DNA of 64,000 bases, taken from positions 62,001 through 126,000 of IMG/VR virus record IMGVR_UViG_3300008954_003475; one strand, 5' to 3'. Positions 24,501-63,739 of the stretch are shown here, piece by piece. Under the pieces are notes generated by a model. The model searched no databases and had not been told where the DNA came from. It was given only the letters and a program-made list of their open reading frames with translations. Every line of letters begins with the position of its first letter. The stretch's first letter is position 1. A program made the translations under genes and the position numbers.

Positions 24501-24763
24501 CGAAGCTCTGTTCTTCCGCTAACGACAGGAATGTTTTGAAGCTCAAAAAAGCGCCCATCACCGCTACCGGTGGGGCTGCAATCTGCCGCTCCATCCTCTC
24601 CGCCGCCTGCTGCGGCCTGAACAATGGTCTCCTCCCTGAGGCCTTCGCCCATAACACAAACTATTCTTATTCCGCCTGGGATAGAGACCCCACGGGAAAG
24701 AACCCTATCTCTTGCAAATGCTCCAGGCTGAATGAAACCTGAAATGCCGGGTATATTAGCCAT
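21521..24763 (-). CDS. Contractile tail sheath protein (1080 aa, with insertions)
   Basis: N-terminal PGAFARD..S. C-terminal sheath core (ERVAFIG...LTYKTLSGF...GRTTSQSG..EDEEISIIFIRD...VEQDKVDPRQINVFLQFSPAYPINYIFIDIEV). Confidence 0.92.
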   Translation of the reverse strand: MANIPGISGFIQPGAFARDRVLSRGVSIPGGIRIVCVMGEGLREETIVQAAAGGGEDGAADCSPTGSGDGRFFELQNIPVVSGRTELRLNGTLLFGKEDEIDANGFDSAFDFRLDPATGCIELQGASIGDQDGKGYSAASMNIGTGTIIEDASCDPFITLDVLDDSAPAERWTVRCVSVVRDSNGDPIPGLATFSVTGSESGQIYDSAGSPMAFHSSYYTSGDGAISGTSDECTDGFVVAYGDVSGLAFPQGSATLKSGDETESTTDTFVVAGADIVTQGQAMAGDFLCIDGYAGYEIEDLEYDGTDTTITLTTDSLGPADWTDMDWEIRATNLLIDDEDVLHNTTTGAPTTEGSFTSGDVGKTVVMCAGTNSNGGRYTVSAITSTRRLRLHALDDESTGLPDLEGTGGLSDTGLTFHMLENNGILLLGIEEGAVPFEVGDKFYIDVNSRALALGDNLEAKYVFEGDLNDPEFFTGANSLFTKHGNPSEDNTLSLGSQMAMENGAPAILALQCKPAIPRRTTATLLEERDSLGVGGFPDCGSGCEVDDLRFVISRPITGLRNGRPDADSRVNIFIVRDGEETQVFPNKVDFYNSQLESDIQQYNWIGSSDNAFSYTVVNIDEDIVGNGIEGEIAEDDDGFYFTTPEFDFDGEHVGMTIVVTSMENAGEAWDSRTALTSKEQVSGALGLDNDGVDEVELTISAVTDDSKAYVVRASDGEAITLAAEYEDINFFIKDPSSTPDDACLLLHEDLVTSGVLQDGDGLKISYVDENDSDYFDTNWFNALEALEAADAQIIVPLPTQAISSIFRATVNHCENMSSVANRMERVAFIGAQMGVSAAALIGTEEVAVEDIGILEGIQGDDPEEVLDDNVEDLVNFKLSDNYTSNRCVYMFPDTIVRNVNGTNVNLHGFYMAAAASGWLSARQNVALPLTYKTLSGFALTRDKIFRPVILNGLGNVGATVVEPVTGGGKVLAGRTTSQSGFVEDEEISIIFIRDTVKRVLRNSLKGFIGGVQSGDTNNLVGARVSSIMSALIAQGLVTQYKNVRVEQDKVDPRQINVFLQFSPAYPINYIFIDIEVGVI

Positions 24764-51499: not shown

Positions 51500-52552
51500 T
51501 TAAGCAGTCACAGTACCTGTAGCGACACCACGAGGGTTGACGATACCAATACCAATGATTTCATTAACGACCCAACCAAGCTTAAGCTGCTTGGGCTCAT
51601 CGGCAGGAAGAACCTCAATGTCCTGACGGACAGGCATCACACCAACAAACTCTGGATCAGCACAAGCAAAGGCACGACCGGCTGGAACAACCTTGGATAC
51701 GACAATGTCGGCACCAAAGATGTGACCATAAAGTCCGGTCTGAAGCAACTCACGCTGAGTCACTGGATCGACCTGCGATCCACCGCCTGCACCAGCAGAC
51801 TCCCAGTTCAGCATATCAGTAAATTCATTAATGTTGAGGAAGTACTTAGAAGTAACTAAGTCCCAACGATCAATGCTTCGCTTAAGATCAAGCATACCAG
51901 ACTTAGAAAGCTGAGTGGTATTAGTTCCGCCTGTAGCGTTACCATCAGCATTAGAAAGGTCTAGCGAAACAGGAGCATTCTCACCACCGCCATTTGTAGA
52001 ATCTCCAGCGAACTGAAGAGCAGCAAAGACGTTAGCATCCTCCTGTGCCTGGATCTCCTGACGAGCCTTCTGCTGCGCACGATCAACAACGTTGAATCGA
52101 CGCCGCTTGACTTCAGCGATACGAACCGTTGGGTTTGAAACAACCTCAAACTCAGGGACGGTCACGCGATCACCAAAGACGCGAGACTCAGGGGCAGAAC
52201 CATTACTGGATACAACTACGGCCGCGACATCAATATCACGATCATAAACTGGAAGAGCGCCTTGTGGCAGCGGATCAACAACTAATGCCTTACGAGCGAC
52301 ACCCTGATAATCAAGGTTTCGACGGATCGGATTAGCCATTGCCTGACCTAAAGCAATCTTTCCTTCTTGGGTCATCAAAGCCTGCTTGATCATCTCATCT
52401 CTCTGGCTATCATTCAAGCCAGGCGCGGTGGCCTGAGCATTGCTTGATGGCTGAAGATCTTCGATAACAGAAGCATACTTGACGATTTGACTTAGAGCCT
52501 CCTGAACATTGGAGGCATTGATTTCACCATGTGTATTAAATAGTGTAGACAT
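51500..52552 (-). CDS. Major capsid protein (HK97 fold, 350 aa)
   Basis: IRRNLDYQGVARKALVVDPLPQG..PVYDRD (E-loop), KARQEIQAQEDANVFAAL (spine helix), GHIFGADIVVSKVVPAG..F (P-domain). Strong codon bias and a strong terminator after it. Confidence 0.9.
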   Translation of the reverse strand: MSTLFNTHGEINASNVQEALSQIVKYASVIEDLQPSSNAQATAPGLNDSQRDEMIKQALMTQEGKIALGQAMANPIRRNLDYQGVARKALVVDPLPQGALPVYDRDIDVAAVVVSSNGSAPESRVFGDRVTVPEFEVVSNPTVRIAEVKRRRFNVVDRAQQKARQEIQAQEDANVFAALQFAGDSTNGGGENAPVSLDLSNADGNATGGTNTTQLSKSGMLDLKRSIDRWDLVTSKYFLNINEFTDMLNWESAGAGGGSQVDPVTQRELLQTGLYGHIFGADIVVSKVVPAGRAFACADPEFVGVMPVRQDIEVLPADEPKQLKLGWVVNEIIGIGIVNPRGVATGTVTA

Positions 52553-52561
52553 AATATCCTC

Positions 52562-53218
52562 CTATGGACTAGTCGGGTTAAGACTAAGCAGGTATACTGC
52601 GTAGTACTCGACAGCAGTGTTAGTTAACCCTGCTGACGCTCTATTGGTTGAGACAAGTGACGAATCTGCCACTGCTCCACAGAAAACTCCAAGCTGATCA
52701 CCGCCTGTAGTTCCAAGACGACCTGTTGCCGCCTCTCCAAAGACAGCTGTATTAACAGCCGTCATAGCATCAATACCATTGGTCGCATGAGCGGTAGCGG
52801 CAGAGCCGTTAACGCCATAGAGACCAGGCTGATGCCACACGGTAACCTTACCGGAAGCACGATTAGTCGCAGGACCAATCGTTACTGCACCGGACTCACT
52901 TGTAGCCGCTCCAGTATTTGAGCCAATCAGTTCTCCAAACAAAGTACCATACTGAGCAATACCCTCGTCGGCAAGGCCGCCTAAGGCACCATCTGTACGA
53001 ACACTGAGCTGAAAGTTCCAAAGAATCGGAGCTAAAAGACCAGCACCACCGCCTACACCCATAGGACCAACATCGCCAACATCAGCAGCGTAACCATCAC
53101 CCGCAGAATCTGCGGCCAAGGATACATATTCACCACCAGTAATTGCAGCAGCATCGGCACCATCGAGATCAAACGTACCAAGGGGTCTTAACCCTGGGTT
53201 TAATAATTTAAGAGCCAT
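52562..53218 (-). CDS. Capsid decoration/cement protein; start revised to MALKLL
   Basis: GGAG SD before ATG 53218. Directly upstream of the MCP with the same codon bias. Gly/Ala-rich beta pattern ASGKVTVWHQPGLYGV. Confidence 0.7.
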   Translation of the reverse strand: MALKLLNPGLRPLGTFDLDGADAAAITGGEYVSLAADSAGDGYAADVGDVGPMGVGGGAGLLAPILWNFQLSVRTDGALGGLADEGIAQYGTLFGELIGSNTGAATSESGAVTIGPATNRASGKVTVWHQPGLYGVNGSAATAHATNGIDAMTAVNTAVFGEAATGRLGTTGGDQLGVFCGAVADSSLVSTNRASAGLTNTAVEYYAVYLLSLNPTSP

Positions 53219-53248
53219 TTTAATATTCTCCATATTAAATTTTACATT

Positions 53249-53273
53249 GATATGTTCAACCATTGAACATATC
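53249..53273. promoter_or_regulatory. Perfect 11-bp hairpin in the leader of the decoration/MCP genes
   Basis: GATATGTTCAA-CCA-TTGAACATATC with no U-tract on the minus strand. Confidence 0.55.
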
Positions 53274-53305
53274 CTTTAGTCATTAGACTGTAACTTAAAA
53301 GCTGA

Positions 53306-55966
53306 TTACTTACTTCTTTTTTCAAGAACATCACGCACCCAGGCGTAGTTTGCTCTATAGTTTCCCGTTGGAGCACTAAGTGCCACTCCGTGTGTCTGAC
53401 GCTTTTGTTCTAATCCGTTTTCAACCAAGCCACCTCTTCCGATAGAGTCTAAGACAACTACCGCCTTTGGATGAGCCGAGTGAATCAGGTCAACTCCAGT
53501 TTCATCATGCACATTATATAGGGATTTGTAATCACCCTTTGGTGTTTCCGCCTTTTCGTCATACAGTCCTTTAAGACCTGTAAAATAAGATCGGAGATAT
53601 TGGTCGCTATTGTTAAGATCTGTTACAGCATCTTTACAATAGGCCTTCGAAACATCATCTGCGCCCTTAAAGAGCTCAGAATCATCGTAAATTGTATTGT
53701 TATTAGTAGAACTTAAAGCTTCTTCTGCAATTTTCTTAAGAGAATCAAATCTTTCTAGTCTACTTTCTTCAAAAATATCATGTGTTTGCTCCGCATATTT
53801 CATGAGCAACTCTATTCTTTCAGAAGCATCTACGCCTAATCTAAAGGCTCTACGGCGTCGGCGCCTAACGTCTCGACCCATCCTCTGCTTCTTTCTTCCG
53901 GCATAACCCTGGCCTCGTAAGCCTCTGATTTTTCGGCCCCTTGTTAGCCTTCGGCTTCTTCTTCTGCCCATAAGCTTTCCTCCAGCTACGCCTCTTTCTG
54001 CAAGGCCATAACCTGCGGCGGCAATAAATGCTTCATTTATAGCCCTTTGTGCATCGCCTCCCTGTTCAACAAGCTTTACATTATAAACACCTCCAGCGCC
54101 TTTTAGGTCATCCAGACCCTCTCTGACTGATGCTACAAGAAATGGATCTGTTGGGTTTGGGCCTCCTCGAACTCTTCTTACAAAAGCATAATGCAAATCT
54201 ATCCCATCATCCGTAGTAAAGGGTGGGACCAATCTAACATAAAATGGCATTCTATATACTCTCTTAAGCTGCTCTAAAGACTGTCTTAAAGCAGCTTGAG
54301 CCGCTGGATCTCCAGCATCCGCTGCAGCCTGTAACTCCGCAAGCCCTTGAGCCGCTCTTTTCCAATCTCCAGATCTTGCACTGCTTGTTATCTCCTCTAC
54401 TGATGGAGGAAGGTCTTCGGGGGTTTGACCGCCACTATCTTCCGGCGGTAGATCACCACCCTTGTCTTCATCATCGTCCTGCCAAGGAAGATCCCCCTGG
54501 CCTGCCTGATAGGCAAGGTAACCAATGCCTGCCACGGCAGCTCCTCCAAGAAGCCACTTTAACCACTTTCGGCCCTTAGCAGCTTTAACAGCATCCTCTC
54601 CAACATTAACGGCTAATTTTAAATGAGTATTTCCAATATCTTGAAGCTTTTGTATAACCCTTACATACTCATCATCAGCAATTCTTCCTGCTCGCTTAGC
54701 ATCGTCAAGAACAGTAACTATCCTGTCCATATCATCAGCCTCTCGCAACAAAACTTTATTTCCAGTTTGCTCAGCTAATTGACGCATTGAATTCTGTGTT
54801 TCTCCAATGTGAAGATGCAGCTCTGCTTTTCCGCCAGCAACATCCCCAACGCTTCCGCCGCCGCCTCCGCCGCCGCCAGCGCCAGCGCCGCCTCGACCTA
54901 TTGACGTTGCCTTAGCATCTACCTCAGATATAGCATTGGTAACCTGCTTCATCTCTGAATCAAGTCCATTCACATAGTTCTTAAAGCCTCTCATGCGGTT
55001 GCCGAAACCAGCCTGCTGAGTTGCTACTTGATTTATTCCCATAAATATATCACCAGTTGAGGCGTTGTCCCCAATCCTAAGTGACTGTCTCGCATTCTGT
55101 TCGGCAAGCTGAGCATACGAAAACCCCTTTTCTAAACTTTTTCTCATACTAGCACGAAGAGCGACCGGACGTATTTTATCAAGAGACTTCCAAGCGGCCT
55201 TTAAGTCTTTCACATCACCAGATCTTAAATACTGCTTTAATGAAACATCTATCTTTTCAATACCTTTTACTATCTTTTCTCGATTCCTCTCCATCTCCAG
55301 AAGCTCATCTGGAGTATATTTCCCTGCTCCACGAGCAGCCTCTTCGCCCAAACTCTTGGCGCTTCCCCTCGTAGCTCTTGCAAGATCTCGTTCTCGCTTA
55401 GCCGCTTCGGCTGCTGCTCCGCCGGTTCTTGTCCCGGCCGCTGCCGTATCACCTGCTTTTCCAAAAGCAGAATAATCACCTGACTTAATAGCCTTCCATA
55501 CCTTTTGTGCATTCTCTTTCCCAACAGCCCTTTCAACTATAAGAATCATCTCGTCTTCAGACTTTCCTGCCTTTACCGCATCCCCAAGAGCAGCGCCAAG
55601 CTTTTGAATCTTCTGTGTTTGTGCTCCGCCTCGATTACTGGCGGAAAACAAAGCCCTAAAGCCTTCCGGAAGATCCAGGCCTCTTATCGAACCTCCTGCT
55701 GCAATGGTGCCTTCCGTTGCAACAGCCGCTGCTCTGCGCGCAGCAGCAGCGGCTGCTTCAGCGGCAGCTTTGTCGGCCGCCCGGGCAGCGGCAACAGCAG
55801 CATCGGCCTCTCTTACGGCCTTAGCACCCCTAAGGGCATCGTCAAATCCCGAGACCACCCCGGCCTCTTTCTTTAAAGACTGATCTAATCTCTTCTCTTG
55901 AAGCCTGAACATAGTTTCAAAATATGCATTTATAGCGCTGTCTTCAGATATTTTATTTATACGCAT
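53306..55966 (-). CDS. Putative internal head / ejection protein (886 aa) with one TM helix
   Basis: Ala/Gly/Arg-rich helical protein in the head module. TM-like KWLKWLLGGAAVAGIGYLAY, an Arg-rich block, and hydrophobic-x-K-x-A motifs near both ends. Confidence 0.5.
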   Translation of the reverse strand: MRINKISEDSAINAYFETMFRLQEKRLDQSLKKEAGVVSGFDDALRGAKAVREADAAVAAARAADKAAAEAAAAAARRAAAVATEGTIAAGGSIRGLDLPEGFRALFSASNRGGAQTQKIQKLGAALGDAVKAGKSEDEMILIVERAVGKENAQKVWKAIKSGDYSAFGKAGDTAAAGTRTGGAAAEAAKRERDLARATRGSAKSLGEEAARGAGKYTPDELLEMERNREKIVKGIEKIDVSLKQYLRSGDVKDLKAAWKSLDKIRPVALRASMRKSLEKGFSYAQLAEQNARQSLRIGDNASTGDIFMGINQVATQQAGFGNRMRGFKNYVNGLDSEMKQVTNAISEVDAKATSIGRGGAGAGGGGGGGGSVGDVAGGKAELHLHIGETQNSMRQLAEQTGNKVLLREADDMDRIVTVLDDAKRAGRIADDEYVRVIQKLQDIGNTHLKLAVNVGEDAVKAAKGRKWLKWLLGGAAVAGIGYLAYQAGQGDLPWQDDDEDKGGDLPPEDSGGQTPEDLPPSVEEITSSARSGDWKRAAQGLAELQAAADAGDPAAQAALRQSLEQLKRVYRMPFYVRLVPPFTTDDGIDLHYAFVRRVRGGPNPTDPFLVASVREGLDDLKGAGGVYNVKLVEQGGDAQRAINEAFIAAAGYGLAERGVAGGKLMGRRRSRRLTRGRKIRGLRGQGYAGRKKQRMGRDVRRRRRRAFRLGVDASERIELLMKYAEQTHDIFEESRLERFDSLKKIAEEALSSTNNNTIYDDSELFKGADDVSKAYCKDAVTDLNNSDQYLRSYFTGLKGLYDEKAETPKGDYKSLYNVHDETGVDLIHSAHPKAVVVLDSIGRGGLVENGLEQKRQTHGVALSAPTGNYRANYAWVRDVLEKRSK

Positions 55967-56382
55967 GTAACTTCCTGCTCTAAAATCTCATCAATTGTTC
56001 TTTCGATCTTATAAGCCAATTTGATGTTTCCCTCTTCTATAGCCGCTCTCGCCAAGCTTCTAAGGTCATCAACAACTTCATCCTGAAGGTCATCACCATC
56101 CTCTATAAGTCCATCTTCTGCAGATTCATCATCTGCGACTTCATCATCTTGAGCATCGCCCGTAAAAACTGATTTTACAGTCTCCTTTACCTCTTGAGCT
56201 TTTTGTTTAACCTTTTCCAAAAGATTCATATTTTCGTTAGCCTCTTGAGCAACATCTGCGGCAATTTTTCTCTGAAGAATCTCTGCTCTATGAACAGTAT
56301 CTACAATGCTCTTTTCAAGCTCTTGCCATACTTCGCTGCTTTGGTAATGGGCTCGATCTTCCTTGCTCCATGAATTAGGCAT
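55957..56382 (-). CDS. Acidic head-associated protein (scaffold/core-like)
   Basis: GGAG SD, RKIAAD motif, acidic tract, C-terminal LAYKIERTIDEI helix. Confidence 0.5.
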   Translation of the reverse strand: MPNSWSKEDRAHYQSSEVWQELEKSIVDTVHRAEILQRKIAADVAQEANENMNLLEKVKQKAQEVKETVKSVFTGDAQDDEVADDESAEDGLIEDGDDLQDEVVDDLRSLARAAIEEGNIKLAYKIERTIDEILEQEVTCV

Positions 56383-56420
56383 TTATATCTCCAATATTGT
56401 ATATCATCACATTTTAAATA

Positions 56421-56427
56421 ATTAGTA
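56421..56427 (-). promoter_or_regulatory. TACTAAT motif
   Basis: AAACTACTAATTATTTAAAAT overlapping the end of the upstream gene, 39 nt before ATG 56382. Confidence 0.45.
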
Positions 56428-56429
56428 GT

Positions 56430-57122
56430 TTACAACAACATGAATTCCAGGGTTCCAATCGCTGCAGATGGAGGCCCCGTACATATCGAAACTCCCGGAT
56501 GACTATCCGTAGGCTGAGAAGAGGTTAGCTTGCCGTCAAGCCCTACATATAAAGTGCAATTAACCGGATAAATCTGTGTTGTATCAAACTGATCTGTTGC
56601 ATATATACCTCTTTGGTAATGAAGAGTAACTCGACCACTACCTACTGTAGTGTCGTCTCCCGGTTTGCCTGCAACTCTATAAATATAATTTACAATTATC
56701 CTATAGCTATCATATGTTCCATCGCCATCGGCATCATGGTTTAATTCCGTTCCAGCCGGAATAGTCACAACTCCATTTACAGAATTCAAAACAATAGATA
56801 TAGTAGAGGTAAAGCTACTTTCTATAATATTTGGATATTCCATAACGCCAGTAACCTCAACGGTTCCAACGCGATTTCCATTATCATCTATTTCAGAAGA
56901 TTGAGCCTCAATCACTAAGACCTCATCTATTTGAGCCTTTGTAAACGCAGAGGTTCTAACATCATCAATAATACCTAACGGGGCAGTTCCATCGCTTATA
57001 CTTGCAACTATATCATTTCCAATTAATCCAAGCTGGGCAAACATGCCGGGTTCAAACTCTGCCGTTGGATCAACGGGCAAGCTCATTGGCAATGCATTAC
57101 CACTATGAATAACTTTAAGCAA
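56430..57122 (-). CDS. Divergent capsid decoration-like protein with a central insertion
   Basis: TTG start with GGGGAG SD. GSGRVTLHYQRGIY parallels ASGKVTVWHQPGLY, and LYVGLDGKLT parallels ...GKLTT/GRLGT of the two other decoration genes. Confidence 0.55.
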   Translation of the reverse strand: MLKVIHSGNALPMSLPVDPTAEFEPGMFAQLGLIGNDIVASISDGTAPLGIIDDVRTSAFTKAQIDEVLVIEAQSSEIDDNGNRVGTVEVTGVMEYPNIIESSFTSTISIVLNSVNGVVTIPAGTELNHDADGDGTYDSYRIIVNYIYRVAGKPGDDTTVGSGRVTLHYQRGIYATDQFDTTQIYPVNCTLYVGLDGKLTSSQPTDSHPGVSICTGPPSAAIGTLEFMLL

Positions 57123-57147
57123 TTTGTTCTCCCCGGTTAAAAGTATT

Positions 57148-57178
57148 AAAAGGGAGGGAAAAGACTTCCCTCCCTTTT
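57148..57178 (-). terminator. Terminator-like hairpin (possibly bidirectional)
   Basis: AAAAGGGAGGGAA-AAGAC-TTCCCTCCCTTTT, giving a T-run after the GC stem on both strands. Confidence 0.7.
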
Positions 57179-57207
57179 ATTTTACTATTAATAGTAAAAA
57201 TATTTTA

Positions 57208-57762
57208 CTAGTAACCGATTTTATTAATGGTAACTCTCACCATATCAGCAGCAAATTTATCACCATTATTAGAAAAATCAGAGGCCATCTTATTAAGGGT
57301 ATTAACTATACCCTCTTTTCTTTTGCCCTCTTTTACCAAGTCGCCCCTAATGCTAAAAGCAGTAGCCTCAACAACGTCTGCCGCGAAGGCTTCGCCCTTA
57401 GCTCGCAAGCTGCCTGCAATCTTTCCAAGTCCATTCATAATATATTGGCCGGAAGGGTCAACGGATGAAAATGTTTCAAGATTATCTATCACATCATCGA
57501 CCATAGAAGCGCTATCGGTTACAGCATCATCACCAGAATCAACCAACATATCAGAAAGAGCTGCGTCAGAAAGATAGTCTTCAGCATCATTAATCATGTC
57601 ATCAGCTTTATCTCCGCCATCTTGGTTGAGCTTTTTATCTCCGCCATCATTGTTGCCCAGAGGCTTCTGCTCCTGAGCTTCCTTTACCATTGTTTGACCA
57701 CTGCCCATGAGCCTTGAAAACTCATGAGCAATGTTATCGCCATTAGTTCTAATGCTATACAT
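57208..57762 (-). CDS. Head-associated protein with internal LxKxA(G/S) helical repeats; start revised to MYSIRT
   Basis: Repeats LGKIAGSLRAKGEAFAADVVEAT and LNKMASDFSNNGDKFAADMVRVT, plus MVKEAQ. Confidence 0.6.
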   Translation of the reverse strand: MYSIRTNGDNIAHEFSRLMGSGQTMVKEAQEQKPLGNNDGGDKKLNQDGGDKADDMINDAEDYLSDAALSDMLVDSGDDAVTDSASMVDDVIDNLETFSSVDPSGQYIMNGLGKIAGSLRAKGEAFAADVVEATAFSIRGDLVKEGKRKEGIVNTLNKMASDFSNNGDKFAADMVRVTINKIGY

Positions 57763-57770
57763 ATTACCCC

Positions 57771-60700
57771 CTATTCCCACATCGAAGACAAAGAGTCTGG
57801 AGATAATAGTACTGTGTTAGAAGAAGTGTGGGATCCAGAATCAGACTCTACACCAATATTGACGCCTCCAAGATCAGAAGCAATCTTTGTAGAACTGACA
57901 GATCTCGCGTTTCCTATGCTTCTCTTGAATGCCTCAAACGCATTATTATCAAAAGTCATAATCTCATCAACCTGTCTATCAAGAGCCACCTTGGTTGTTC
58001 CAAGAAGTCCCTTGTTCTGCATTTCCATTCCAACGTCATATGCTCTACGCAACTTCACTCTGTACACCTCTCTCTCTTCATCCGCTCGCTTTTCAGCCAA
58101 CTTAGTATTCAGAGTATTCTGCAATGAAGCTGTTACACTGTTTGGATTACTCTCAACAGCGTTTGTTGTTACATTAGTATCGGCAACAATCGAGCTAAGA
58201 CCATCCTCTGCAACCTCGTCCGCAACAGTTGTCGTATCATCAGCACTCTTCAACAGAGCCTCTCTGCTTCTGGCACGTTCTGCCAAAACTCGACCTTCTG
58301 CCTGCTTTAGAATGGCTTCACGACGAGAGCGCCGAAGGTTCATAGCCTCAAGAACCAGTCCGTCTGCAGCTTCATCGCCGCTGCCATCGCCCGCCTCCCA
58401 AGCTTCATCGTCAGAACCTACATCTGGACCGAGCATTGCATCTTCAGCATAATTGACAGTATCTTCAGCAGCATCCTCCACAGTATCTTCAGCAGCATCA
58501 TCAGCAGCATCAGCAGATAGGTCAAAATCTTGAGCAAATCTCACCAAAGCCCTGGCCTCGCCTGTAATTTGATCTGCATCTTTTACAGCAGAACTTGCAA
58601 GCTTAACGAACTGGCCTGTCTGAGCGTTAGAAAGCTTAGAAATATTATCATAAGTTTCTGCAACCATAGAAAGTTCATCAGCAGAGCTGTCTAGCTTTCT
58701 ATATGCTTTCTTAAGATTTGTTACAAGCTGACTTGATAACGCTCCAAGGCCGCCATCTCCAGCCTCAACCTCTTCGCCCGGCCCGCCTTTATCCTTTCCG
58801 GTAAAGACATTTACGTCAACATCTGCAAGCCTCTGATCTTCAAGCTGTCCAACAAGGTCTCTCACCTCATCGAGCAACTGCTCAATTTCGGCCAACCTAT
58901 TATCAATAGCTTCAGCAGGCTCCTCCTCAGCCCCCTCTTCCGCCTCAGGCTCTTCGTCGCCAAGCGGAGGGAGATCATCCATCGGAGCAGCTTCAGCCTC
59001 ACCGCCTCCGAGGTCTGGAACATCACCGCCTCCGAGGTCTGGAACATCACCGCCTCCGAGGTCTGGAGCATCACCGCCTCCGAGGTCTGGCATGTCTTGA
59101 GCTGTCTTTAAAAGACCCGAAACATAATTAAGACCAAAAGCGCGAATCTGATCACAGACCTCTCTGCCATACTCCTGGCTCTTTAACCAGTTCCAATTAC
59201 TTCTTAATTCTGGTCCAAAAATATCACCAGCAGTAGCGGCAACAACCCTTTTGTTCCCTGCAAAAACTTCAAACATACTGTTTGTATGATCAACAGACCC
59301 ATCCAAATTTCTACGAACACTAAAGCGTGTACTCAAAGAAGGCCCATTATAAGCCTGCTTTGTAAGTCCGGCGGACCCATCAGAGGCTCTATGCAGAGTT
59401 TCCTTGACCTGAGAATCTCCAGGCCACGTACCAGAAGTTCCGCCCATGTTGCCGCCTTGCAGCATCTGCTTGTCTTGATTGTCCCTAACGCCCTTATAGT
59501 CTTCAGACTTATAAGCGTTAGGCTCAACACCATCTGCTCCACCTTGCATATAGGCCAACCTGCGCAATCTGCGATCCTCTAACTGAGCACGACTAAGCTT
59601 CTCCTTAGCGTTAATCTCTTCCTTCTCCTTAGCTGACAGGTCATAAGTTCCCGTCATCTGCCTATCTTGGTTATCTCTAAGATTCTTAGAATCTTCAGAC
59701 TTATAAGTATTGGGCTCTGCACCATCTGCTCCACCTTGCATATAGGCTATACGGCGGCGAAGCTCTGCCCTCTTTCTCATTCTTGACTCATTCATAATAT
59801 CCTCCACTATTGAATTGATTGAAAAGTCGTCTACATAATCATTGGTCTTTTCATTATTGTTTGCCACTTTAACGTTAAGACCAACGCTTGTAGCTGCGAA
59901 TCCAGTCAAAGGCTCACCGCCAGACGGATGCACTTGTGATAAAACATCATCACCTTGTGGAAAATCGGGATTATTCCCAGAATCTCCACCACCTAAATAA
60001 CCTATCCTAGAACTTACTGCACTCTGTTCTTGAACATCCCCAGGAAGCCTTGATCCCTTGACATTCTCATATGTAGTAAATCTCTCAGTAGGCGTTACAG
60101 AAGTATCCTCTCTCGAAGGCAAATTCAATTCTCCAATTAAATTTGCAATTATTTCTTTTACATTAGAAGGTACTCCAGGATCACTTAGTACATTTGCCGC
60201 CTGGGATACCGCTTTTAAAGCTTCAGCTGTATTTCTAGATCTTTCCGATGAATCTGTAAACTCATCAGACGAATTCTTTAACAAACCATTATTTTCCAAA
60301 AATCCTCTTACAATATTTTTTCTTTCCGATACAGAACAGCCATCTTTACCACAGGCCGTCTTCATGATTCCTTCCAAATGCTCTGCCTGCTTAAGACTCA
60401 AGGTCCCAAGCATACTGCTAACATCATCTATTCCATAATTTATAAACTCAGTTTTATATTCTTGCAAAGAAGCAATACACTTTAATAATACCGCTCCAGG
60501 TTCAGCAGGCTGAACAACAAGGCTGTACTCTATTGGCTTTAGCCCAACATTAATCTCCCCATGAGCTGTCTTGTTTAAAATATGTTGACAATACTCTTTT
60601 TGAGTAGTGGCCTTATTTAAACATTCAGAACATACGGATGTTTCTACGGCTGTTCCCATAGAGCCATATCTCACAAGGCCTGTTTCAACCTTTCTTGCTA

Positions 60701-61190
60701 AATCTGGATAATTAATCTTGTCCAATGCACACAAGCCAACAACTTGCTTGAACTTTTCATCATAATGGGTATCTAAGATTATTCCTCTTATTCCGTCTAC
60801 GGAACTTGATTCATGATCCCTACACAAAGGAAGGCCAACCCATCGACTGGTGGCCTTCTTTAGTTCAGACTCTGGAAAAATATCTCTATTATTATTCCTA
60901 TGTGGCTGAACGTTTCCATGCCACTTCCAATTTTCATCGAAAAAGCCCCAAGCGTCTTCTCCGCCCGAGGCTTTCTTTATATGCCCTTCTTCGTTTAACA
61001 AAGAAGATTCTGCTGCTTTTAAAAATATTATTGAAAAATATAAAAAGTCATCTGACTTAGGAGCTATAGATTTTATATTGCTAGCTAATTTTGATAGTTG
61101 CTTTACCAGCTTTGGGTTTGCAAGCACTTCTTGCTGTTCGTGCGTATCTACAACATTGTTCTCTGGAGAAGAACATATCTTTTTAAACAT
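57771..61190 (-). CDS. Prohead protease fused to a long scaffold-like region (~1140 aa); start revised to MFKKIC
   Basis: GLPLCRDH...GIRGIILD (His), YGSMG (Ser) followed by a CxxC...C.H Zn insert and EYSLVVQPAEPGA. Long acidic/coiled-coil C-terminal part. Confidence 0.8.
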   Translation of the reverse strand: MFKKICSSPENNVVDTHEQQEVLANPKLVKQLSKLASNIKSIAPKSDDFLYFSIIFLKAAESSLLNEEGHIKKASGGEDAWGFFDENWKWHGNVQPHRNNNRDIFPESELKKATSRWVGLPLCRDHESSSVDGIRGIILDTHYDEKFKQVVGLCALDKINYPDLARKVETGLVRYGSMGTAVETSVCSECLNKATTQKEYCQHILNKTAHGEINVGLKPIEYSLVVQPAEPGAVLLKCIASLQEYKTEFINYGIDDVSSMLGTLSLKQAEHLEGIMKTACGKDGCSVSERKNIVRGFLENNGLLKNSSDEFTDSSERSRNTAEALKAVSQAANVLSDPGVPSNVKEIIANLIGELNLPSREDTSVTPTERFTTYENVKGSRLPGDVQEQSAVSSRIGYLGGGDSGNNPDFPQGDDVLSQVHPSGGEPLTGFAATSVGLNVKVANNNEKTNDYVDDFSINSIVEDIMNESRMRKRAELRRRIAYMQGGADGAEPNTYKSEDSKNLRDNQDRQMTGTYDLSAKEKEEINAKEKLSRAQLEDRRLRRLAYMQGGADGVEPNAYKSEDYKGVRDNQDKQMLQGGNMGGTSGTWPGDSQVKETLHRASDGSAGLTKQAYNGPSLSTRFSVRRNLDGSVDHTNSMFEVFAGNKRVVAATAGDIFGPELRSNWNWLKSQEYGREVCDQIRAFGLNYVSGLLKTAQDMPDLGGGDAPDLGGGDVPDLGGGDVPDLGGGEAEAAPMDDLPPLGDEEPEAEEGAEEEPAEAIDNRLAEIEQLLDEVRDLVGQLEDQRLADVDVNVFTGKDKGGPGEEVEAGDGGLGALSSQLVTNLKKAYRKLDSSADELSMVAETYDNISKLSNAQTGQFVKLASSAVKDADQITGEARALVRFAQDFDLSADAADDAAEDTVEDAAEDTVNYAEDAMLGPDVGSDDEAWEAGDGSGDEAADGLVLEAMNLRRSRREAILKQAEGRVLAERARSREALLKSADDTTTVADEVAEDGLSSIVADTNVTTNAVESNPNSVTASLQNTLNTKLAEKRADEEREVYRVKLRRAYDVGMEMQNKGLLGTTKVALDRQVDEIMTFDNNAFEAFKRSIGNARSVSSTKIASDLGGVNIGVESDSGSHTSSNTVLLSPDSLSSMWE
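59001..59090 (-). repeat. 24-nt tandem repeat (about 3.75 copies) encoding DLGGGD(A/V)P
   Basis: ACCGCCTCCGAGGTCTGGA(A/G)CATC units at 59001, 59025, 59049, 59073. Confidence 0.9.
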
Positions 61191-61286
61191 AGCAAACCCT
61201 TCTAGACTAATAAACCGGTACAAACATTTATATAAATATTAGTTTTTAAACTTTTTGTGTAATTTTTTTTTGAATTACATAGTTTT

Positions 61287-61469
61287 TTATTCTTTGTTTT
61301 CCAATCCATCTTCCGAAGAATATTCATTTATTATCTTAACTCTTCTATCTTTTTCTTCGTCAGAGTCTAAATAAATAGTATTTTCTTCTTGATTATCAAC
61401 GTTGTCATCTTTTTCTTTAGAATTTTTTACTATGATTTTCTTAGTCTTATCACCAAACTTTATAAACAT
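61287..61469 (-). CDS. Small charged hypothetical protein
   Basis: 60-aa ORF starting 2 nt after the upstream stop. Confidence 0.55.
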   Translation of the reverse strand: MFIKFGDKTKKIIVKNSKEKDDNVDNQEENTIYLDSDEEKDRRVKIINEYSSEDGLENKE

Positions 61470-61471
61470 GC

Positions 61472-63739
61472 TTACTCCGATAGTACCAAAATTCCTAAAA
61501 TATTTGAATTTATATACTCTTTTGCTCTAGAAAGAGAAAGTCCCATATCATTTATTAAGTTTTCTGCACTTCCAGTTTTCTCTGTACATTGATTTATAAA
61601 ATCATCAGATTCTATAATATTTATTAAATCAAAAACGTCTTTAATTCCATCGGACGAGTTTTTTGCAGCAAGCGCAATAGAGCTTATTATCTCAGATGTA
61701 GTTGAAACATCCTTGATGTCATTCATTATCTGAATTCCATTCTTTATGTTTATTAACATTCTTTTTGTAATTCGCGCATTTCTTTTAGAAGATTGACTAT
61801 ATTGTCCTTTGCTATTTGCAATTACCTCAACATTTCCTTGAACTTTCTGATATTCTGCAAGATTCTTTTTAAGATTTTCAACCAACGTTTCGCACATATC
61901 TTCAGATCTGTCAAAATATCTCATCGCTTGCTTTGCTTTGTTCTTAACCTCATCCGGAACAGGAATGCCTGCTGTTTTTACAAAAGAATCATTATATAGC
62001 TCAATAGTTCTTCCTGAATACTTTTCTTTAAGGGCCGAAAAAACATCCTCTGTTCCAAAGCCTTCAGGAACTCTGATCAAATCTGTATCAACAGAAATCT
62101 TAACGCCTGTCTTAATCTCAATCTCTTTTTGAATTATATTTTCTAATACAAATTTATCATTATCTCCCCTGGATACAAAAACAAGTTTTTTATTTGTATC
62201 TGTCGATATATCAGATATTTTCTTCAATGCTTTATTTCTATTTACATTATTCAGATTAGAAAAGCTCATAAATTGACTAGGGATTAATGAATATTTAAAA
62301 TTAATATTTTCATAGAAACCCTTTGATACTAAATTATTTAATCTAATATCTACAAAAGCTTCTTTATCAATCGAAAAGGTTTCATCATATAGACCTCTAA
62401 ATATTTTATCATCCCTATCTGGAGGCCTATGCCTATACAGTCTAATCTTTGCTTTATTATCTATAATTAAATTATCAATATCAAATGCAACTATATCTTT
62501 TATACTATCATTATTTAATGATGCCTTTTTAACTATTGTTTTTGCAGAATTTTCATCATCATTTATAACATAAATCTTATTATTTAAAATATTATAAAAG
62601 CCAGAATTTAATAAATTAGAACGCTTAAAAATAACTTTATCTACACCAATTCCATTAATTATATTTGATATCTTTGATAAATCTTTATCAAGACCTGCTC
62701 CATAATCTATATACATTAAATTAGATTCTTTAATACCAAGAACATCAGAGAGTCCTCCGGATATCTCTAAAACGTTTTTAACCCCAGAGCACCCATATAC
62801 GCCCAAAGATCCTGGTTTAATATTTTTGCAAATCTTTTTAATTTTTGAATTATCATCTATAAAAATAATATCAATTGGATAATTAACACTTCCCATGTGA
62901 TAACAAACGTCTGTAGGCTTATCATATGGAAATAATAATCCGGATTCCTTTTCTAATTTAGAATAAACTTGGAGGCCATCAATTTTTTCTTTATATGTTT
63001 TTGCCACATCACACTTAAAAACAATAGATGCATCATTGATATTGTCTTTCCCATAGCACCTAACAACTGCCGTTTTGTTTAAATCATTTCGTGAAACAAT
63101 ATACTTGCCAATCTTATCTATATGTTTATCTGTAATAATAAATCCTAATTTTTCTATAGAAGAAGATATGTCTATTGAGTTACTCGTAACAATAAACCCA
63201 TGGCCAACCGGTCTGAGGTGGTCGCAGATGTTGCCCAAAACTATCTCTAAAGAATCTTCTTCAGATGGCGTGCTGGTTATATAAAAACCATCAAATTTAT
63301 TTCTAAAAGTATGAAACATTGGATTTCCATATTCTTGATGAAAATTATGTAAATTTACTTTACTCGTTGCATTTTTAGATAAATTAATTAAATTATGACC
63401 TGCTTTTAAAATAACAGAAGCATTATCATCTGTCTGTTCTCCAATCCCCAAAACTGTTGATCCTCGCCTAAGCAGCCGCATAAACTTGTTGGAAAGATTT
63501 GCCAAAGCTTGATACTCATCATCTTCTATATCTGAATATAAATCTTCTGCCGGAAAAAATATACCTCCAGAGTATCCCACAGGGGCTTGCTCTTCAGGAG
63601 TTGTAGATATTTGAGCCACCATCATATCATAACGAGGCTGTGCATCCATATGTATATCCATGTGCGCATCTCCCGATGCAGACATAGATCCCATCTCAAG
63701 CTCTGGATCTCCAATATATGGCCAAGATAACTTTCTCAT
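61472..63739 (-). CDS. Multidomain protein containing a DUF192-like domain
   Basis: FKCDVAKTYKEKIDGLQ....LEKESGLLFPY......YHMGSVNYPIDIIFID....IKKI...IKPG...VLEISGG matches the DUF192 pattern. Confidence 0.65.
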   Translation of the reverse strand: MRKLSWPYIGDPELEMGSMSASGDAHMDIHMDAQPRYDMMVAQISTTPEEQAPVGYSGGIFFPAEDLYSDIEDDEYQALANLSNKFMRLLRRGSTVLGIGEQTDDNASVILKAGHNLINLSKNATSKVNLHNFHQEYGNPMFHTFRNKFDGFYITSTPSEEDSLEIVLGNICDHLRPVGHGFIVTSNSIDISSSIEKLGFIITDKHIDKIGKYIVSRNDLNKTAVVRCYGKDNINDASIVFKCDVAKTYKEKIDGLQVYSKLEKESGLLFPYDKPTDVCYHMGSVNYPIDIIFIDDNSKIKKICKNIKPGSLGVYGCSGVKNVLEISGGLSDVLGIKESNLMYIDYGAGLDKDLSKISNIINGIGVDKVIFKRSNLLNSGFYNILNNKIYVINDDENSAKTIVKKASLNNDSIKDIVAFDIDNLIIDNKAKIRLYRHRPPDRDDKIFRGLYDETFSIDKEAFVDIRLNNLVSKGFYENINFKYSLIPSQFMSFSNLNNVNRNKALKKISDISTDTNKKLVFVSRGDNDKFVLENIIQKEIEIKTGVKISVDTDLIRVPEGFGTEDVFSALKEKYSGRTIELYNDSFVKTAGIPVPDEVKNKAKQAMRYFDRSEDMCETLVENLKKNLAEYQKVQGNVEVIANSKGQYSQSSKRNARITKRMLINIKNGIQIMNDIKDVSTTSEIISSIALAAKNSSDGIKDVFDLINIIESDDFINQCTEKTGSAENLINDMGLSLSRAKEYINSNILGILVLSE

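What the first reader, a model, noticed from the sequence alone, without database searches (positions are those of the whole stretch)
51500..63739. Pervasive hydrophobic-x-[KR]-x-A motif across head-module proteins: candidate new prohead-protease cleavage code
Seen: the motif recurs, usually just before acidic or low-complexity tracts. MCP: IVKYA|S (residues 23-27, nt 52472-52486). 886-aa protein: LKKEA|G, LMKYA|E, LKKIA|E, LFKGA|D. 57208 gene: MVKEA|Q, LGKIA|G, LNKMA|S. Protease/scaffold: LTKQA|Y, LLKTA|Q, FVKLA|S, LVRFA|Q, ILKQA|E, LLKSA|D, plus looser HIKKA|S, NVKVA|N, STKIA|S, RRIA|Y, RRLA|Y. DUF192 protein: LSKNA|T, LNKTA|V, IVKKA|S, FVKTA|G. By eye it is much sparser in the tail genes. 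Known: T4 gp21 and phiKZ gp175 process many head proteins at short motifs ending in Glu. Inference: this phage's protease cuts after Ala in a basic context, trims a ~27-aa MCP propeptide, shreds its own scaffold, and marks a set of internal-head cargo proteins. The motif could be used to predict the packaged proteome genome-wide.
Basis: partly seen in the sequence, partly recalled or inferred. Interest (0 to 1): 0.82.

Follow-up and report, generated by a model that had tools for sequence, protein, structure and literature searches.

The report
Likely new phage protease cleavage motif
A five-residue pattern (Leu/Ile/Met/Phe-x-Lys-x-Ala) is ten times denser in this giant marine phage's head-assembly proteins than in its other proteins. 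It is conserved in distant relatives, including cultured phages, and most likely marks where the head-maturation protease cuts, a specificity not found described for phages and not yet tested at the bench.

Summary
The refined motif [LIFM]-x-K-x-A occurs 24 times in the 8 head-module ORFs (3.96 expected) and 10 times in the other 33 ORFs (10.6 expected). L.K.A is the top hit of an unbiased scan of about 80,000 gapped triplets. Reversed, shifted and charge-swapped control motifs are not enriched. In diverged orthologues the Lys and Ala are conserved (0.71/0.72) while the x positions drift (0.39-0.40).

The same motif marks head modules in distant lineages sharing this protease clade: Bacillus phage G, Vibrio phage D181 and Salmonella phage Arash. 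In Arash the head module has 37 hits against 4.5 expected; the rest of the genome has 52 against 47.7. In 130 full-length representatives of the protease-scaffold family, the motif brackets the catalytic domain, is depleted inside it and is dense in the scaffold part. Eight of 15 head-side proteins carry it within their first 40 residues, including MCP (23-27) and portal (11-15).

Best reading: substrate sites of an assemblin-fold prohead serine protease, probably cut after Ala. A cut after Lys is not excluded, and nothing is experimentally shown. The "before acidic tracts" claim fails. This is a new variant of a known kind.

The parts
57771..61223 (-). Protease-scaffold fusion ORF (1150 aa from the TTG; the true start is probably Met12 at 61188-61190). 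It has an N-terminal leader, an assemblin-fold catalytic domain and a ~900-aa scaffold-like C-terminal part carrying 10 of its 12 motif copies.
   Evidence: PHROG head maturation protease, E = 1.4e-11. Orthologues start MFKK. AF2 model pLDDT 84. Foldseek gives 190 viral hits, mostly prohead proteases, and the top PDB hits are T4 gp21 and EBV protease. Motif count is 12 against 2.8 expected.
60456..60908 (-). Catalytic core of the prohead serine protease (ORF residues about 106-256). Candidate catalytic His137 is at 60813-60815 and Ser188 (YGSMG) at 60660-60662. The core also holds an invariant CxxC...CxH cluster.
   Evidence: H, SM and the Cys/His residues are invariant across window, phage G, D181, Arash, Myrna, RSL1 and Motura and across 71 family members. 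Across 130 family representatives the motif is depleted here, 19 against 35 expected.
61083..61097 (-). LSKLA|S, the N-terminal leader site of the protease and candidate autoprocessing site.
   Evidence: Kept in 22/23 orthologues. It aligns with LVKTA|A (phage G), LEKSA|A (D181) and LTKQA|A (Arash). Family-wide hot spot: 129 hits in the 20-40 profile bin across 130 proteins.
60354..60368 (-). IMKTA|C, the first conserved site after the catalytic domain and candidate release site.
   Evidence: Kept in 20/23 orthologues. The family has a second hot spot just after the core. G, D181 and Arash have L[EQ]KVA|[SN] directly at the domain end, where this clade has LL[KR]C[IL]AS.
58242..59780 (-). Scaffold-part sites: MRKRA 59766-59780, LRRLA 59553-59567, LTKQA 59352-59366, LLKTA 59100-59114, FVKLA 58596-58610, LVRFA 58533-58547, ILKQA 58299-58313 and LLKSA 58242-58256.
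   Evidence: Coordinates verified. Kept in 23/23, 22/23, 5/23, 22/23, 19/23, 18/23, 13/23 and 10/23 orthologues respectively.
51500..52552 (-). Major capsid protein (350 aa, HK97 fold, 46% identical to phage G gp27). It has an N-terminal extension of about 43 aa that phage G lacks.
   Evidence: phrog_2522, E = 1.3e-69; tblastn; PDB 6wkk aligns from residue 46.
52472..52486 (-). IVKYA|S, MCP residues 23-27. A cut here would remove a 27-aa propeptide (nt 52472-52552).
   Evidence: Near-invariant in 60 relatives (one has IVRYA), while residues 33-45 vary. Arash MCP has LVKEA|G and D181 MCP has LTKEA|G, both at residues 25-29.
53306..55966 (-). 886-aa head-module protein with Ala-, Gly- and Arg-rich tracts. 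Sites: LKKEA|G 55862-55876 (res 31-35), LMKYA 53792-53806, LKKIA 53726-53740 and LFKGA|D 53660-53674 (res 765-769). Candidate internal head protein with an N-terminal propeptide and a released C-terminal domain.
   Evidence: At site 31, K identity is 0.89 and A 0.86, against 0.05/0.16 at the x positions and 0.13 in the flanks. Site 765 is kept in 34/37 orthologues.
57208..57780 (-). 190-aa acidic head-module protein. Sites: MVKEA|Q 57676-57690, LGKIA|G 57415-57429 and LNKMA|S 57283-57297.
   Evidence: 3 against 0.47 expected. Site 162 is kept in 23/24 orthologues with variable x positions. Orthologues are enriched 7.75x.
61472..63739 (-). 755-aa protein with a DUF192 domain (res 242-339). Conserved sites: IVKKA|S 62522-62536 and FVKTA|G 61970-61984. 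Its other three instances are not conserved.
   Evidence: Pfam PF02643, E = 2.8e-18. Sites 402 and 586 are kept in 9/11 and 10/11 orthologues; sites 120, 220 and 457 in 0-2/11.
52562..53263 (-). 233-aa Gly/Ala-rich protein next to the MCP. It has no motif and is predicted uncleaved; possibly a decoration protein.
   Evidence: 0 hits here, and 1 against 8.9 expected over 61 orthologues. No similarity to phage G gp26.
56430..57122 (-). 230-aa well-conserved head-module protein with no K-type motif; predicted uncleaved.
   Evidence: 0 against 2.8 expected over 28 orthologues.
55957..56382 (-). 141-aa acidic head-module protein. Its only match (LARAA) is R-type and poorly conserved.
   Evidence: Kept in 4/27 orthologues.

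Best explanation
The window carries the head-assembly module of a very large, uncultured marine myophage distantly related to Bacillus phage G. Its 1150-aa gene encodes a prohead serine protease of the HK97 / T4 gp21 / herpesvirus-assemblin fold, fused to its own scaffold. The motif [L/M/I/F]-x-K-x-A, often followed by S/A/G/E/Q, is most likely the substrate signature of that protease.

Inferred mechanism: inside the assembled prohead the protease frees itself at sites flanking its catalytic domain. It cuts the scaffold part into pieces. It removes short N-terminal propeptides from the MCP (27 aa), the portal (~15 aa) and several accessory or internal head proteins. It also separates domains of the 886-aa and DUF192 proteins.

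The three constrained residues alternate (i, i+2, i+4), as expected for a substrate bound as an extended strand with P5, P3 and P1 side chains facing the enzyme. The scissile bond is most likely after the Ala, as in herpesvirus A|S sites.

Shown here: the motif's existence, specificity, conservation, distribution and association with the protease clade, and the protease fold. Inferred: cleavage itself, the scissile bond, and which individual sites are used.
For: Specificity:
- Head ORFs have 24 against 3.96 expected; other ORFs 10 against 10.6.
- L.K.A is the top pattern of about 80,000 unbiased triplets.
- Composition-matched control motifs are flat.
- P1 tolerates only small residues, A > C, S, G.

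Selective constraint:
- Motif Lys identity is 0.71 against 0.41 for other Lys (p = 4e-5). Motif Ala is 0.72 against 0.36 (p = 2e-5). The x positions are at 0.39-0.40.
- Individual sites survive in 30-40% identical orthologues.

Independent lineages:
- Phage G protease gp19 has 5 copies of the refined motif (7 if Val is allowed at P5) where about 0.6 are expected. Its portal has MAKQA|A near the N-terminus.
- The Vibrio phage D181 head module has 32 against about 5. Its top unbiased triplet is K.AS (18 against 2, p = 9e-12).
- The Salmonella phage Arash head module has 37 against 4.5, while the rest of the genome has 52 against 47.7.
- A divergent metagenomic clade (L101) shows N-terminal sites in many head proteins.
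- Pfam found no DUF192 or other shared enzyme domain in the Arash and G head-module proteins scanned.

Position relative to the enzyme, in 130 full-length family representatives:
- N-leader: 252 against 33 expected.
- Catalytic core: 19 against 35.
- Scaffold part: 818 against 215.
- Hot spots lie on both flanks of the core.
- The leader site and the domain-end site align across window, G, D181 and Arash.

N-terminal bias:
- 8 of 15 head-side ORFs have a site starting within the first 40 residues (0.67 expected, P = 8e-8), against 1 of 33 other ORFs.
- The portal site, looked for as a prediction, was found and is conserved.

Enzyme identity:
- PHROG protease hit and invariant His and Ser-Met.
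- Confident model, pLDDT 84.
- 190 BFVD matches, dominated by prohead proteases. Top PDB hits are T4 gp21, EBV, HSV-1 and HCMV proteases.
Against: - There is no proteomic or biochemical evidence for any cut. The phage is uncultured.
- The published Arash virion mass spectrometry gives only coverage, not termini.
- The scissile bond is undetermined.
- Several instances lie inside folded, conserved regions and are probably structural rather than cut. FLKAA at protease residues 67-71 has pLDDT about 95. MIKQA at MCP residues 54-58 aligns to mature phage G MCP.
- In this clade the site at the end of the catalytic domain is off-register (LLKCIAS).
- Phage G's MCP has no motif and no N-terminal extension, so MCP trimming is not universal in the group.
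- More distant protease relatives lack the motif (Motura, phiRSL1) or show it only weakly (Myrna).
- PDB fold matches are weak (E about 0.01, TM 0.26-0.47).
Confidence: 0.7

Rival explanations
1. The enzyme and substrates are the same, but the bond cut is after the Lys. The register would be Phi(P3)-x-K(P1)|x(P1')-A(P2'). That matches T4 gp21 (L/I-x-E|) and the Lys|Ser cut of HK97 gp5, with Ala acting as a prime-side determinant.
For: Known assemblin-fold proteases put a hydrophobic residue at P3: T4 L/I-x-E, herpes V/L/I-x-A. This is my own knowledge, with PrV YLQA-T and VQA-S from PMC4498786. Lys is the most strictly defined position, with Arg not accepted in this clade. HK97 cuts after Lys103 (own knowledge).
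Against: The residue after Lys is unconstrained and often bulky. In contrast Ala is replaced only by C, S or G, and the residue after Ala is S/A/G in 20/31 D181 sites and 24/35 Arash sites. K.AS is the top triplet in D181. That pattern fits A|S as the scissile pair better than a P2'-P3' signature.
Confidence: 0.22
2. The motif is a non-catalytic docking or capsid-targeting signal. It would bind the capsid interior, portal or scaffold so that proteins are co-assembled, and it would not be cut.
For: N-terminal capsid-targeting sequences exist in T4 internal proteins (own knowledge). The motif is multivalent in scaffold-like proteins and sits in a predicted helix in the protease leader.
Against: It also occurs in the MCP and portal themselves. 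It flanks the catalytic domain and avoids its interior. Its i/i+2/i+4 spacing and small-residue requirement at the last position are typical of protease subsites, not helix packing. Helix-type control motifs are not enriched. In T4 the targeting sequences are themselves removed at protease sites.
Confidence: 0.06
3. The motif is a by-product of composition, helical periodicity, internal repeats or shared ancestry, with no function of its own.
For: Scaffold proteins are helical and rich in K, A and L. Two sites lie in a tandem repeat (482 and 553). Orthologue counts are not independent.
Against: Reversed and shifted motifs with identical composition give O/E of about 1. The motif appears in unrelated proteins and in lineages with no detectable similarity between their accessory proteins. 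The x positions drift while K and A stay fixed.
Confidence: 0.02

Closest known systems
Herpesvirus assemblin (HSV UL26, CMV UL80a, PrV pUL26) with its release (R) and maturational (M) sites
   Same: The fold superfamily is shared: the top PDB hits include EBV, HSV-1 and HCMV proteases. The architecture is the same, with an N-terminal protease fused to a C-terminal scaffold and self-release at a site right after the catalytic domain (PMC4498786). If the Ala register is right, the cut follows Ala before a small residue (PrV YLQA-T, VQA-S). Phage G, D181 and Arash have L-[EQ]-K-V-A|[SN] exactly at the end of the protease domain.
   Different: In herpesviruses P3 is hydrophobic and few sites are used. 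Here the Ala register puts Lys at P3 and the hydrophobic residue at P5. Dozens of sites occur across many proteins. There is no detectable sequence similarity.
T4 gp21 prohead protease (cuts at L/I-x-E)
   Same: It is the best PDB structural match (5jbl, prob 0.92). One short motif is shared by MCP, portal-vertex, scaffold and internal proteins. N-terminal propeptides are removed, the protease processes itself and the scaffold is shredded.
   Different: T4 has Glu at P1. Here there is no acidic residue in the motif. The T4 protease is not fused to the scaffold.
phiKZ gp175, 201phi2-1 and SPN3US gp245 giant-phage proteases (S/A/G/T-x-E; A-x-E)
   Same: These are giant phages in which many head and ejection proteins lose N-terminal propeptides at a three-residue motif, with Ser preferred at P1' (PMC5694885 and PMC10052503). 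The motif is used there to predict substrates.
   Different: The motif is different (Glu at P1), the MCP lineage is different, and those cuts are mapped by mass spectrometry. Here nothing is mapped.
HK97 gp4 protease acting on the gp5 delta domain
   Same: COG3740-type prohead proteases dominate the BFVD structural matches. HK97 trims the MCP N-terminus and cuts after a Lys (own knowledge), which would fit the alternative register.
   Different: HK97 has a 102-residue delta domain that acts as the scaffold, and no defined multi-protein motif. Here the MCP propeptide would be only 27 aa and the scaffold is a separate domain fused to the protease.
Bacillus phage G head module (gp14 portal, gp19 protease, gp27 MCP)
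   Same: It is the closest cultured relative: MCP 46% identical, protease domain 34%. Its protease carries several motif copies at aligned positions.
   Different: The G protease is a stand-alone 300-aa protein. The G MCP (282 aa) lacks the N-terminal extension and the motif.

Membership tests
Prohead (capsid maturation) serine proteases of the HK97 / T4 gp21 / herpes assemblin fold | Assemblin-like fold of the catalytic domain | tested here: met
   The AF2 model from a 71-sequence alignment has pLDDT 84 and pTM 0.74. BFVD gives 190 matches at E <= 1e-3, mostly annotated prohead or COG3740 proteases. The top PDB hits are T4 gp21 5jbl (prob 0.92) and EBV protease 1o6e (prob 0.84), but E is only about 0.01. 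Sequence profiles found nothing in PDB or Pfam.
Prohead (capsid maturation) serine proteases of the HK97 / T4 gp21 / herpes assemblin fold | Conserved catalytic Ser and His | tested here: met
   His137 and Ser188-Met189 (YGSMG) are invariant in 7 distant homologues and in 71 family members. Their catalytic role is inferred from position, not shown.
Prohead (capsid maturation) serine proteases of the HK97 / T4 gp21 / herpes assemblin fold | Gene placed between portal and MCP, with an adjacent or fused scaffold | tested here: met
   The gene order is TerL, portal, three ORFs, DUF192 protein, protease-scaffold, four ORFs, MCP. The same order is seen in phage G, Arash and D181.
Prohead (capsid maturation) serine proteases of the HK97 / T4 gp21 / herpes assemblin fold | Proteolytic activity on head proteins | not testable with these tools
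   This needs expression and assay, or virion proteomics.
Multi-substrate prohead-protease cleavage code (T4 / phiKZ type) | One short motif shared by MCP, portal, scaffold, the protease itself and accessory head proteins, and absent from tail and non-structural proteins | tested here: met
   p230 and p233 are motif-free.
Multi-substrate prohead-protease cleavage code (T4 / phiKZ type) | Sites placed to release N-terminal propeptides and to free the protease domain | tested here: met
   8 of 15 head-side ORFs have a site within the first 40 residues (P = 8e-8). Hot spots lie on both flanks of the catalytic core.
Multi-substrate prohead-protease cleavage code (T4 / phiKZ type) | Glu at P1 (L/I-x-E or S/A/G-x-E) | tested here: not met
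   Phi-x-[DE]-x-A and Phi-x-E-x-A are not enriched (0.74-0.95x). The unbiased scan finds no E-ending motif. The system works like these but has a different specificity class.
Multi-substrate prohead-protease cleavage code (T4 / phiKZ type) | Mapped mature termini at the motif | not testable with these tools
   No peptide-level data were available.
Herpesvirus-type specificity (V/L/I-x-A|S) | Ala at P1 and a small residue at P1' | tested here: inconclusive
   Ala is obligatory, with only C, S or G as alternatives. The next residue is enriched for S/A/G/E/Q. The scissile bond itself is not known.
Herpesvirus-type specificity (V/L/I-x-A|S) | Hydrophobic residue at P3 | tested here: not met
   In the Ala register P3 is Lys and the hydrophobic residue is at P5.

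The most novel reading that the evidence does not exclude
A very large clade of prohead proteases cuts after Ala in the context [LMIF]-x-K-x-A|[S/A/G]. The clade has 1881 clusters at 50% identity and consists mostly of ~1100-1500-aa protease-scaffold fusions of marine and other giant phages; more distant relatives occur in phage G, Salmonella phage Arash and Vibrio phage D181. This would be a phage counterpart of the herpesvirus Ala|Ser specificity, with the same logic of protease, release site and scaffold. The motif would then allow processed head and internal proteins to be read directly from sequence in thousands of uncultured giant phages.
Probability: 0.42. Interest if true: 0.75.

Novelty: new variant of a known kind. 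Interest (0 to 1): 0.62.

Why it matters
Prohead-protease specificities are mapped for only a handful of phages (T4, the phiKZ group, HK97), and the best-defined ones end in Glu. A different motif that can be read from sequence, shared by a very large and mostly uncultured group of giant phages, would have several uses.
- Mature capsid, portal and internal-protein boundaries could be predicted for structural work.
- Candidate packaged or ejected proteins could be nominated.
- Mis-annotations could be corrected. Myrna gp97 is annotated 'tape measure', and Arash head proteins are annotated only as 'structural protein'.

If the cut is after Ala, the finding also adds a functional parallel between phage prohead proteases and herpesvirus assemblin, beyond the shared fold. 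It is directly testable because three cultured phages (G, Arash, Vibrio D181) carry the motif.

Tried and rejected
- The phage G capsid paper (PMC7316594), which might report mature termini, is not held.
- The Arash paper and its supplements give only coverage and sequences. They contain no peptide termini, and the word 'protease' does not occur in the main text.
- A literature search for LxKxA / K-x-A style names found nothing relevant. The giant-phage proteolysis papers describe only x-E motifs.
- The protease profile found nothing in PDB sequences or Pfam.
- The first AF2 run on 13 close sequences was unusable (pLDDT 51). A 71-sequence alignment fixed this.
- Tests for p233 as a homologue of the phage G decoration protein gp26, and for p230 as a homologue of the Motura gene upstream of its MCP, found no similarity.
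- The word-indexed MCP search returned only relatives at 82% identity or more, so it added no diversity. One representative's contig was too short to include an MCP.
- Compositional or helical artefact as an explanation was rejected by the control motifs.
- A link between the motif and the DUF192 protein was rejected. Pfam found no DUF192 domain in the Arash or phage G head-module proteins scanned, although both carry the motif.
- Motura and phiRSL1 (same MCP and protease superfamily) lack the motif and Myrna is only weakly enriched, so the code does not extend to the whole superfamily.

Full report
WHAT THE LOCUS IS
The window is part of IMG/VR contig IMGVR_UViG_3300008954_003475 (221,878 bp). 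Almost all long ORFs run on the minus strand.

The finding's region is a head-assembly module. In transcription order it contains:
- a 755-aa protein with a DUF192 domain (61472-63739);
- an 1150-aa ORF whose N-terminal part matches head-maturation proteases (57771-61223; phrog_18299, E = 1.4e-11);
- ORFs of 190, 230, 141, 886 and 233 aa;
- a 350-aa major capsid protein (51500-52552; phrog_2522, E = 1.3e-69).

The large terminase and the portal lie just upstream of the window on the same contig (L084). A tail sheath lies downstream (21521-24763).

The closest cultured relative is Bacillus phage G. Its MCP is 46% identical (PDB 6wkk) and its protease gp19 is 34% identical. Relatives are abundant in metagenomes, including Tara Oceans samples.

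CHECKING THE OBSERVATION

Against residue shuffles of each protein, [LIFMV]x[KR]xA occurs 30 times in the eight head ORFs against 10.8 expected. In the other 33 ORFs it occurs 22 times against 25.5.

Relaxing one position at a time defines the real motif:
- P5 is L, M, I or F. Val is not enriched.
- P3 is Lys. Arg is at 1.2x.
- P1 is Ala at 6.5x, with C, S and G weaker.

For [LIFM]xKxA the head ORFs have 24 against 3.96 expected (6.1 per 1000 aa). The rest have 10 against 10.6 (0.62 per 1000 aa).

Control motifs of identical composition are flat, which rules out composition, local K/A/L richness and helical periodicity:
- reversed: 0.97x;
- Phi-x-[DE]-x-A: 0.95x;
- Lys shifted by one position: 1.1-1.2x.

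To guard against post-hoc motif choice I scanned about 80,000 exact gapped triplets. L.K.A ranks first (13 against 1.75, p = 4.6e-8), ahead of RRR, AAA and GGG runs. Codons at the fixed positions are diverse.

One sub-claim fails. Sites are not preferentially followed by acidic tracts (D/E 0.172 against 0.156, p = 0.22).

CONSERVATION
Eighty related loci were fetched (MCP 75-100% identical). Their accessory head proteins are only 30-60% identical to the window's, which gives power to detect constraint.
- Motif Lys residues are 0.71 identical across orthologues, against 0.41 for other Lys in the same proteins (p = 4e-5).
- Motif Ala residues are at 0.72, against 0.36 (p = 2e-5).
- The two x positions sit at background, 0.39-0.40.

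Examples:
- In the 886-aa protein, site 31-35 has K at 0.89 and A at 0.86, with x positions at 0.05/0.16 and flanks at 0.13.
- Site 765-769 of the same protein is kept in 34/37 orthologues.
- Site 162-166 of the 190-aa protein is kept in 23/24.
- DUF192-protein sites 402 and 586 are kept in 9/11 and 10/11.
- Eight sites in the protease-scaffold are kept in at least 18/23.

Other instances are not conserved and may be chance. These include DUF192 sites 120, 220 and 457, site 406 of the 886-aa protein, and protease site 216.

The MCP site IVKYA|S is near-invariant in 60 relatives, while residues 33-45 behind it vary freely. Orthologues as a whole are enriched 2.6-7.8x while most control motifs stay close to 1x. 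The 230-aa and 233-aa proteins have essentially none.

INDEPENDENT LINEAGES
- Phage G. The 300-aa protease gp19 carries 5 copies of the refined motif (7 if Val is allowed at P5) where about 0.6 are expected. The portal has MAKQA|A at residues 16-20. The MCP has none and lacks the ~43-residue N-terminal extension.
- Vibrio phage D181 (and D148, D69). The protease hit is only 26% identical. The head module has 32 hits against about 5 expected. The top unbiased triplet is K.AS (18 against 2, p = 9e-12). The MCP has LTKEA|G at residues 25-29.
- Salmonella phage Arash. The MCP is 62% identical to D181's. The head module has 37 hits against 4.5. The rest of the complete 181-kb genome has 52 against 47.7. 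There is a single outlier, gp242 (8 against 0.72), which the authors annotated as structural. The MCP has LVKEA|G at residues 25-29.
- A metagenomic clade with a ~40% identical protease (L101). It shows N-terminal sites in many head-module ORFs.
- More distant members of the superfamily. Motura and phiRSL1 lack the motif and Myrna is only weakly enriched.

The only enzyme detected in common across the motif-bearing head modules is the protease. Pfam found no DUF192 domain in the Arash or phage G head-module proteins scanned.

WHERE THE MOTIF SITS RELATIVE TO THE ENZYME
A profile of the protease region finds 1881 clusters (50% identity) at E <= 1e-3. The best 150 are mostly 1000-1560-aa protease-scaffold fusions.

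In those 150 the motif occurs 1172 times against 296 expected (3.96x). The reversed motif is at 0.99x and the E variant at 0.74x. Arg at P3 is also enriched in this wider set (2.6x).

Mapped onto 130 full-length proteins:
- the N-terminal leader has 252 against 33 expected, with a sharp hot spot (129 hits in one 20-residue bin);
- the catalytic core has 19 against 35, so it is depleted;
- the C-terminal scaffold part has 818 against 215, with a second hot spot just after the core.

The leader site aligns across the window (LSKLA|S), phage G (LVKTA|A), D181 (LEKSA|A) and Arash (LTKQA|A). The domain-end site is LEKVA|S in G, LQKVA|S in D181 and LEKVA|N in Arash. In the window's own clade that position is off-register (LL[KR]C[IL]AS), and the next conserved site is IMKTA|C at residues 286-290.

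N-TERMINAL BIAS AND A PREDICTION
Eight of 15 head-side ORFs have a site starting within the first 40 residues. These are the MCP, portal, protease, the 886-aa and 190-aa proteins, and three small upstream ORFs. Only 0.67 are expected (P = 8e-8). Among the other 33 ORFs, 1 does.

I predicted a portal site before reading the portal sequence. It is ISKKA|A at residues 11-15. Relatives have ISKKA|G, ISKYA|S and LKKLS|D at that position.

THE ENZYME
So is a CxxC...CxH cluster.

An AF2 model built on the deeper alignment is confident (pLDDT 84, pTM 0.74). It matches 190 predicted viral structures at E <= 1e-3, dominated by prohead or COG3740 proteases. In the PDB its top matches are T4 gp21 and the EBV, HSV-1 and HCMV proteases, though weakly.

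The likely true start of the ORF is Met12.

MECHANISM
Shown: a specific, conserved, protein-level motif that tracks one protease clade. It flanks the catalytic domain, is dense in the scaffold part, and sits near the N-termini of the MCP, portal and accessory head proteins.

Inferred: it is the protease's substrate signature. The protease would release itself, fragment the scaffold and trim propeptides, including 27 residues from the MCP.

The alternation of constrained residues (i, i+2, i+4) fits an extended strand in a protease groove.

Two registers are possible.
- After Ala: P5 hydrophobic, P3 Lys, P1 Ala, P1' small. This fits the small-residue-only tolerance at that position, the S/A/G preference after it and the herpesvirus precedent of cutting after Ala (PMC4498786).
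- After Lys: P3 hydrophobic, P1 Lys. This fits the T4 register and HK97's Lys|Ser cut (own knowledge).

I put the cleavage-motif reading at about 0.7. Within that reading I favour the Ala register by roughly 2:1.

COMPARISON WITH WHAT IS KNOWN
Functionally this resembles the T4 gp21 and phiKZ/SPN3US systems, where one short motif is shared by many head proteins and N-terminal propeptides are removed (PMC5694885, PMC10052503). Their defining Glu at P1 is absent here.

Architecturally it resembles herpesvirus pUL26: protease, release site, scaffold, maturational site.

Searches of the held literature found no description of this motif. The Arash paper does not discuss a protease.

I therefore rate it a new variant of a known kind. 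It is computationally well supported, experimentally untested, and directly testable in three cultured phages.

LIMITS
- Orthologue counts share ancestry.
- Expected values come from per-protein composition.
- Individual sites cannot be called cut or uncut. Some, such as FLKAA 67-71 in the protease fold and MIKQA 54-58 in the MCP, are probably structural.
- Single hits in other proteins are at background frequency. Genome-wide prediction works only for motif-dense, N-terminal or conserved sites.

Noticed in passing
window 26471-30094 and 30104-36016 (minus strand): Two adjacent giant ORFs (1207 and 1970 aa) share a 61% identical N-terminal 200 residues. They look like paralogous tail or fibre proteins with a common anchoring domain and different distal parts.
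   Followed up: partly
window 60456-60908 (protease core): A CxxC...CxH cluster (C198, C201, C212, H214 in ORF numbering) is invariant from this phage to phage G, Myrna, phiRSL1 and Motura. It may be a zinc-binding insertion in this branch of prohead proteases.
   Followed up: no
L101:10001-14707 (P0100) and other ~1400-1650-aa representatives (e.g. P0013, P0077, P0092): Some family members carry an intein (Hint, Intein_splicing and LAGLIDADG hits) inside the protease gene. It splits the protease profile at about position 98-99, next to the conserved N-x-N-x-D motif.
   Followed up: partly
L092:2668-6303 (Mycobacterium phage Myrna gp97): This gene is annotated 'tape measure' in the record, but it is a 1211-aa protease-scaffold fusion. 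It lies two genes upstream of the major head protein (gp99), with gp98 between them, and has the same architecture as the window's 1150-aa ORF.
   Followed up: partly
Salmonella phage Arash 174466-175335 (gp242; L098:11467-12336): This is the only protein outside the Arash head module with strong motif enrichment (8 against 0.72 expected). It is annotated structural from mass spectrometry and is a candidate dispersed scaffold or internal head protein.
   Followed up: no
window 61188-61223: The listed TTG start of the protease ORF is probably 11 codons too early. Most orthologues with a complete N-terminus begin at the equivalent of Met12 (MFKK...).
   Followed up: yes
window 61472-63739: A DUF192 (COG1430) domain sits inside a 755-aa head-module protein between the portal-side genes and the protease. 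No equivalent was found in the Arash or phage G head-module proteins scanned, and its role in the head is unknown.
   Followed up: partly
window 53306-55966: The 886-aa protein combines poly-Ala and poly-Gly tracts, a hydrophobic segment (WLKWLLGGAAVAGIGYLAY) and a very Arg-rich stretch (RRRSRRL...RRRRRR) just upstream of three motif sites. It may be a DNA-binding internal head protein.
   Followed up: no
window 52505-52531 (MCP residues 8-16): The MCP N-terminal segment GE(I/L)NAS is also present about 30 residues into the MCPs of Motura and phiRSL1, which lack the cleavage-type motif. Part of the putative propeptide is therefore older than the motif.
   Followed up: no
window 58900-59100 and 59500-59800 (scaffold part): The scaffold part contains internal repeats: four PDLGGGD(A/V) units, and two ~70-residue units (RR(I/L)AYMQGGADG-EPN-YKSED...RDNQD). 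Each ~70-residue unit carries one motif-like site.
   Followed up: no
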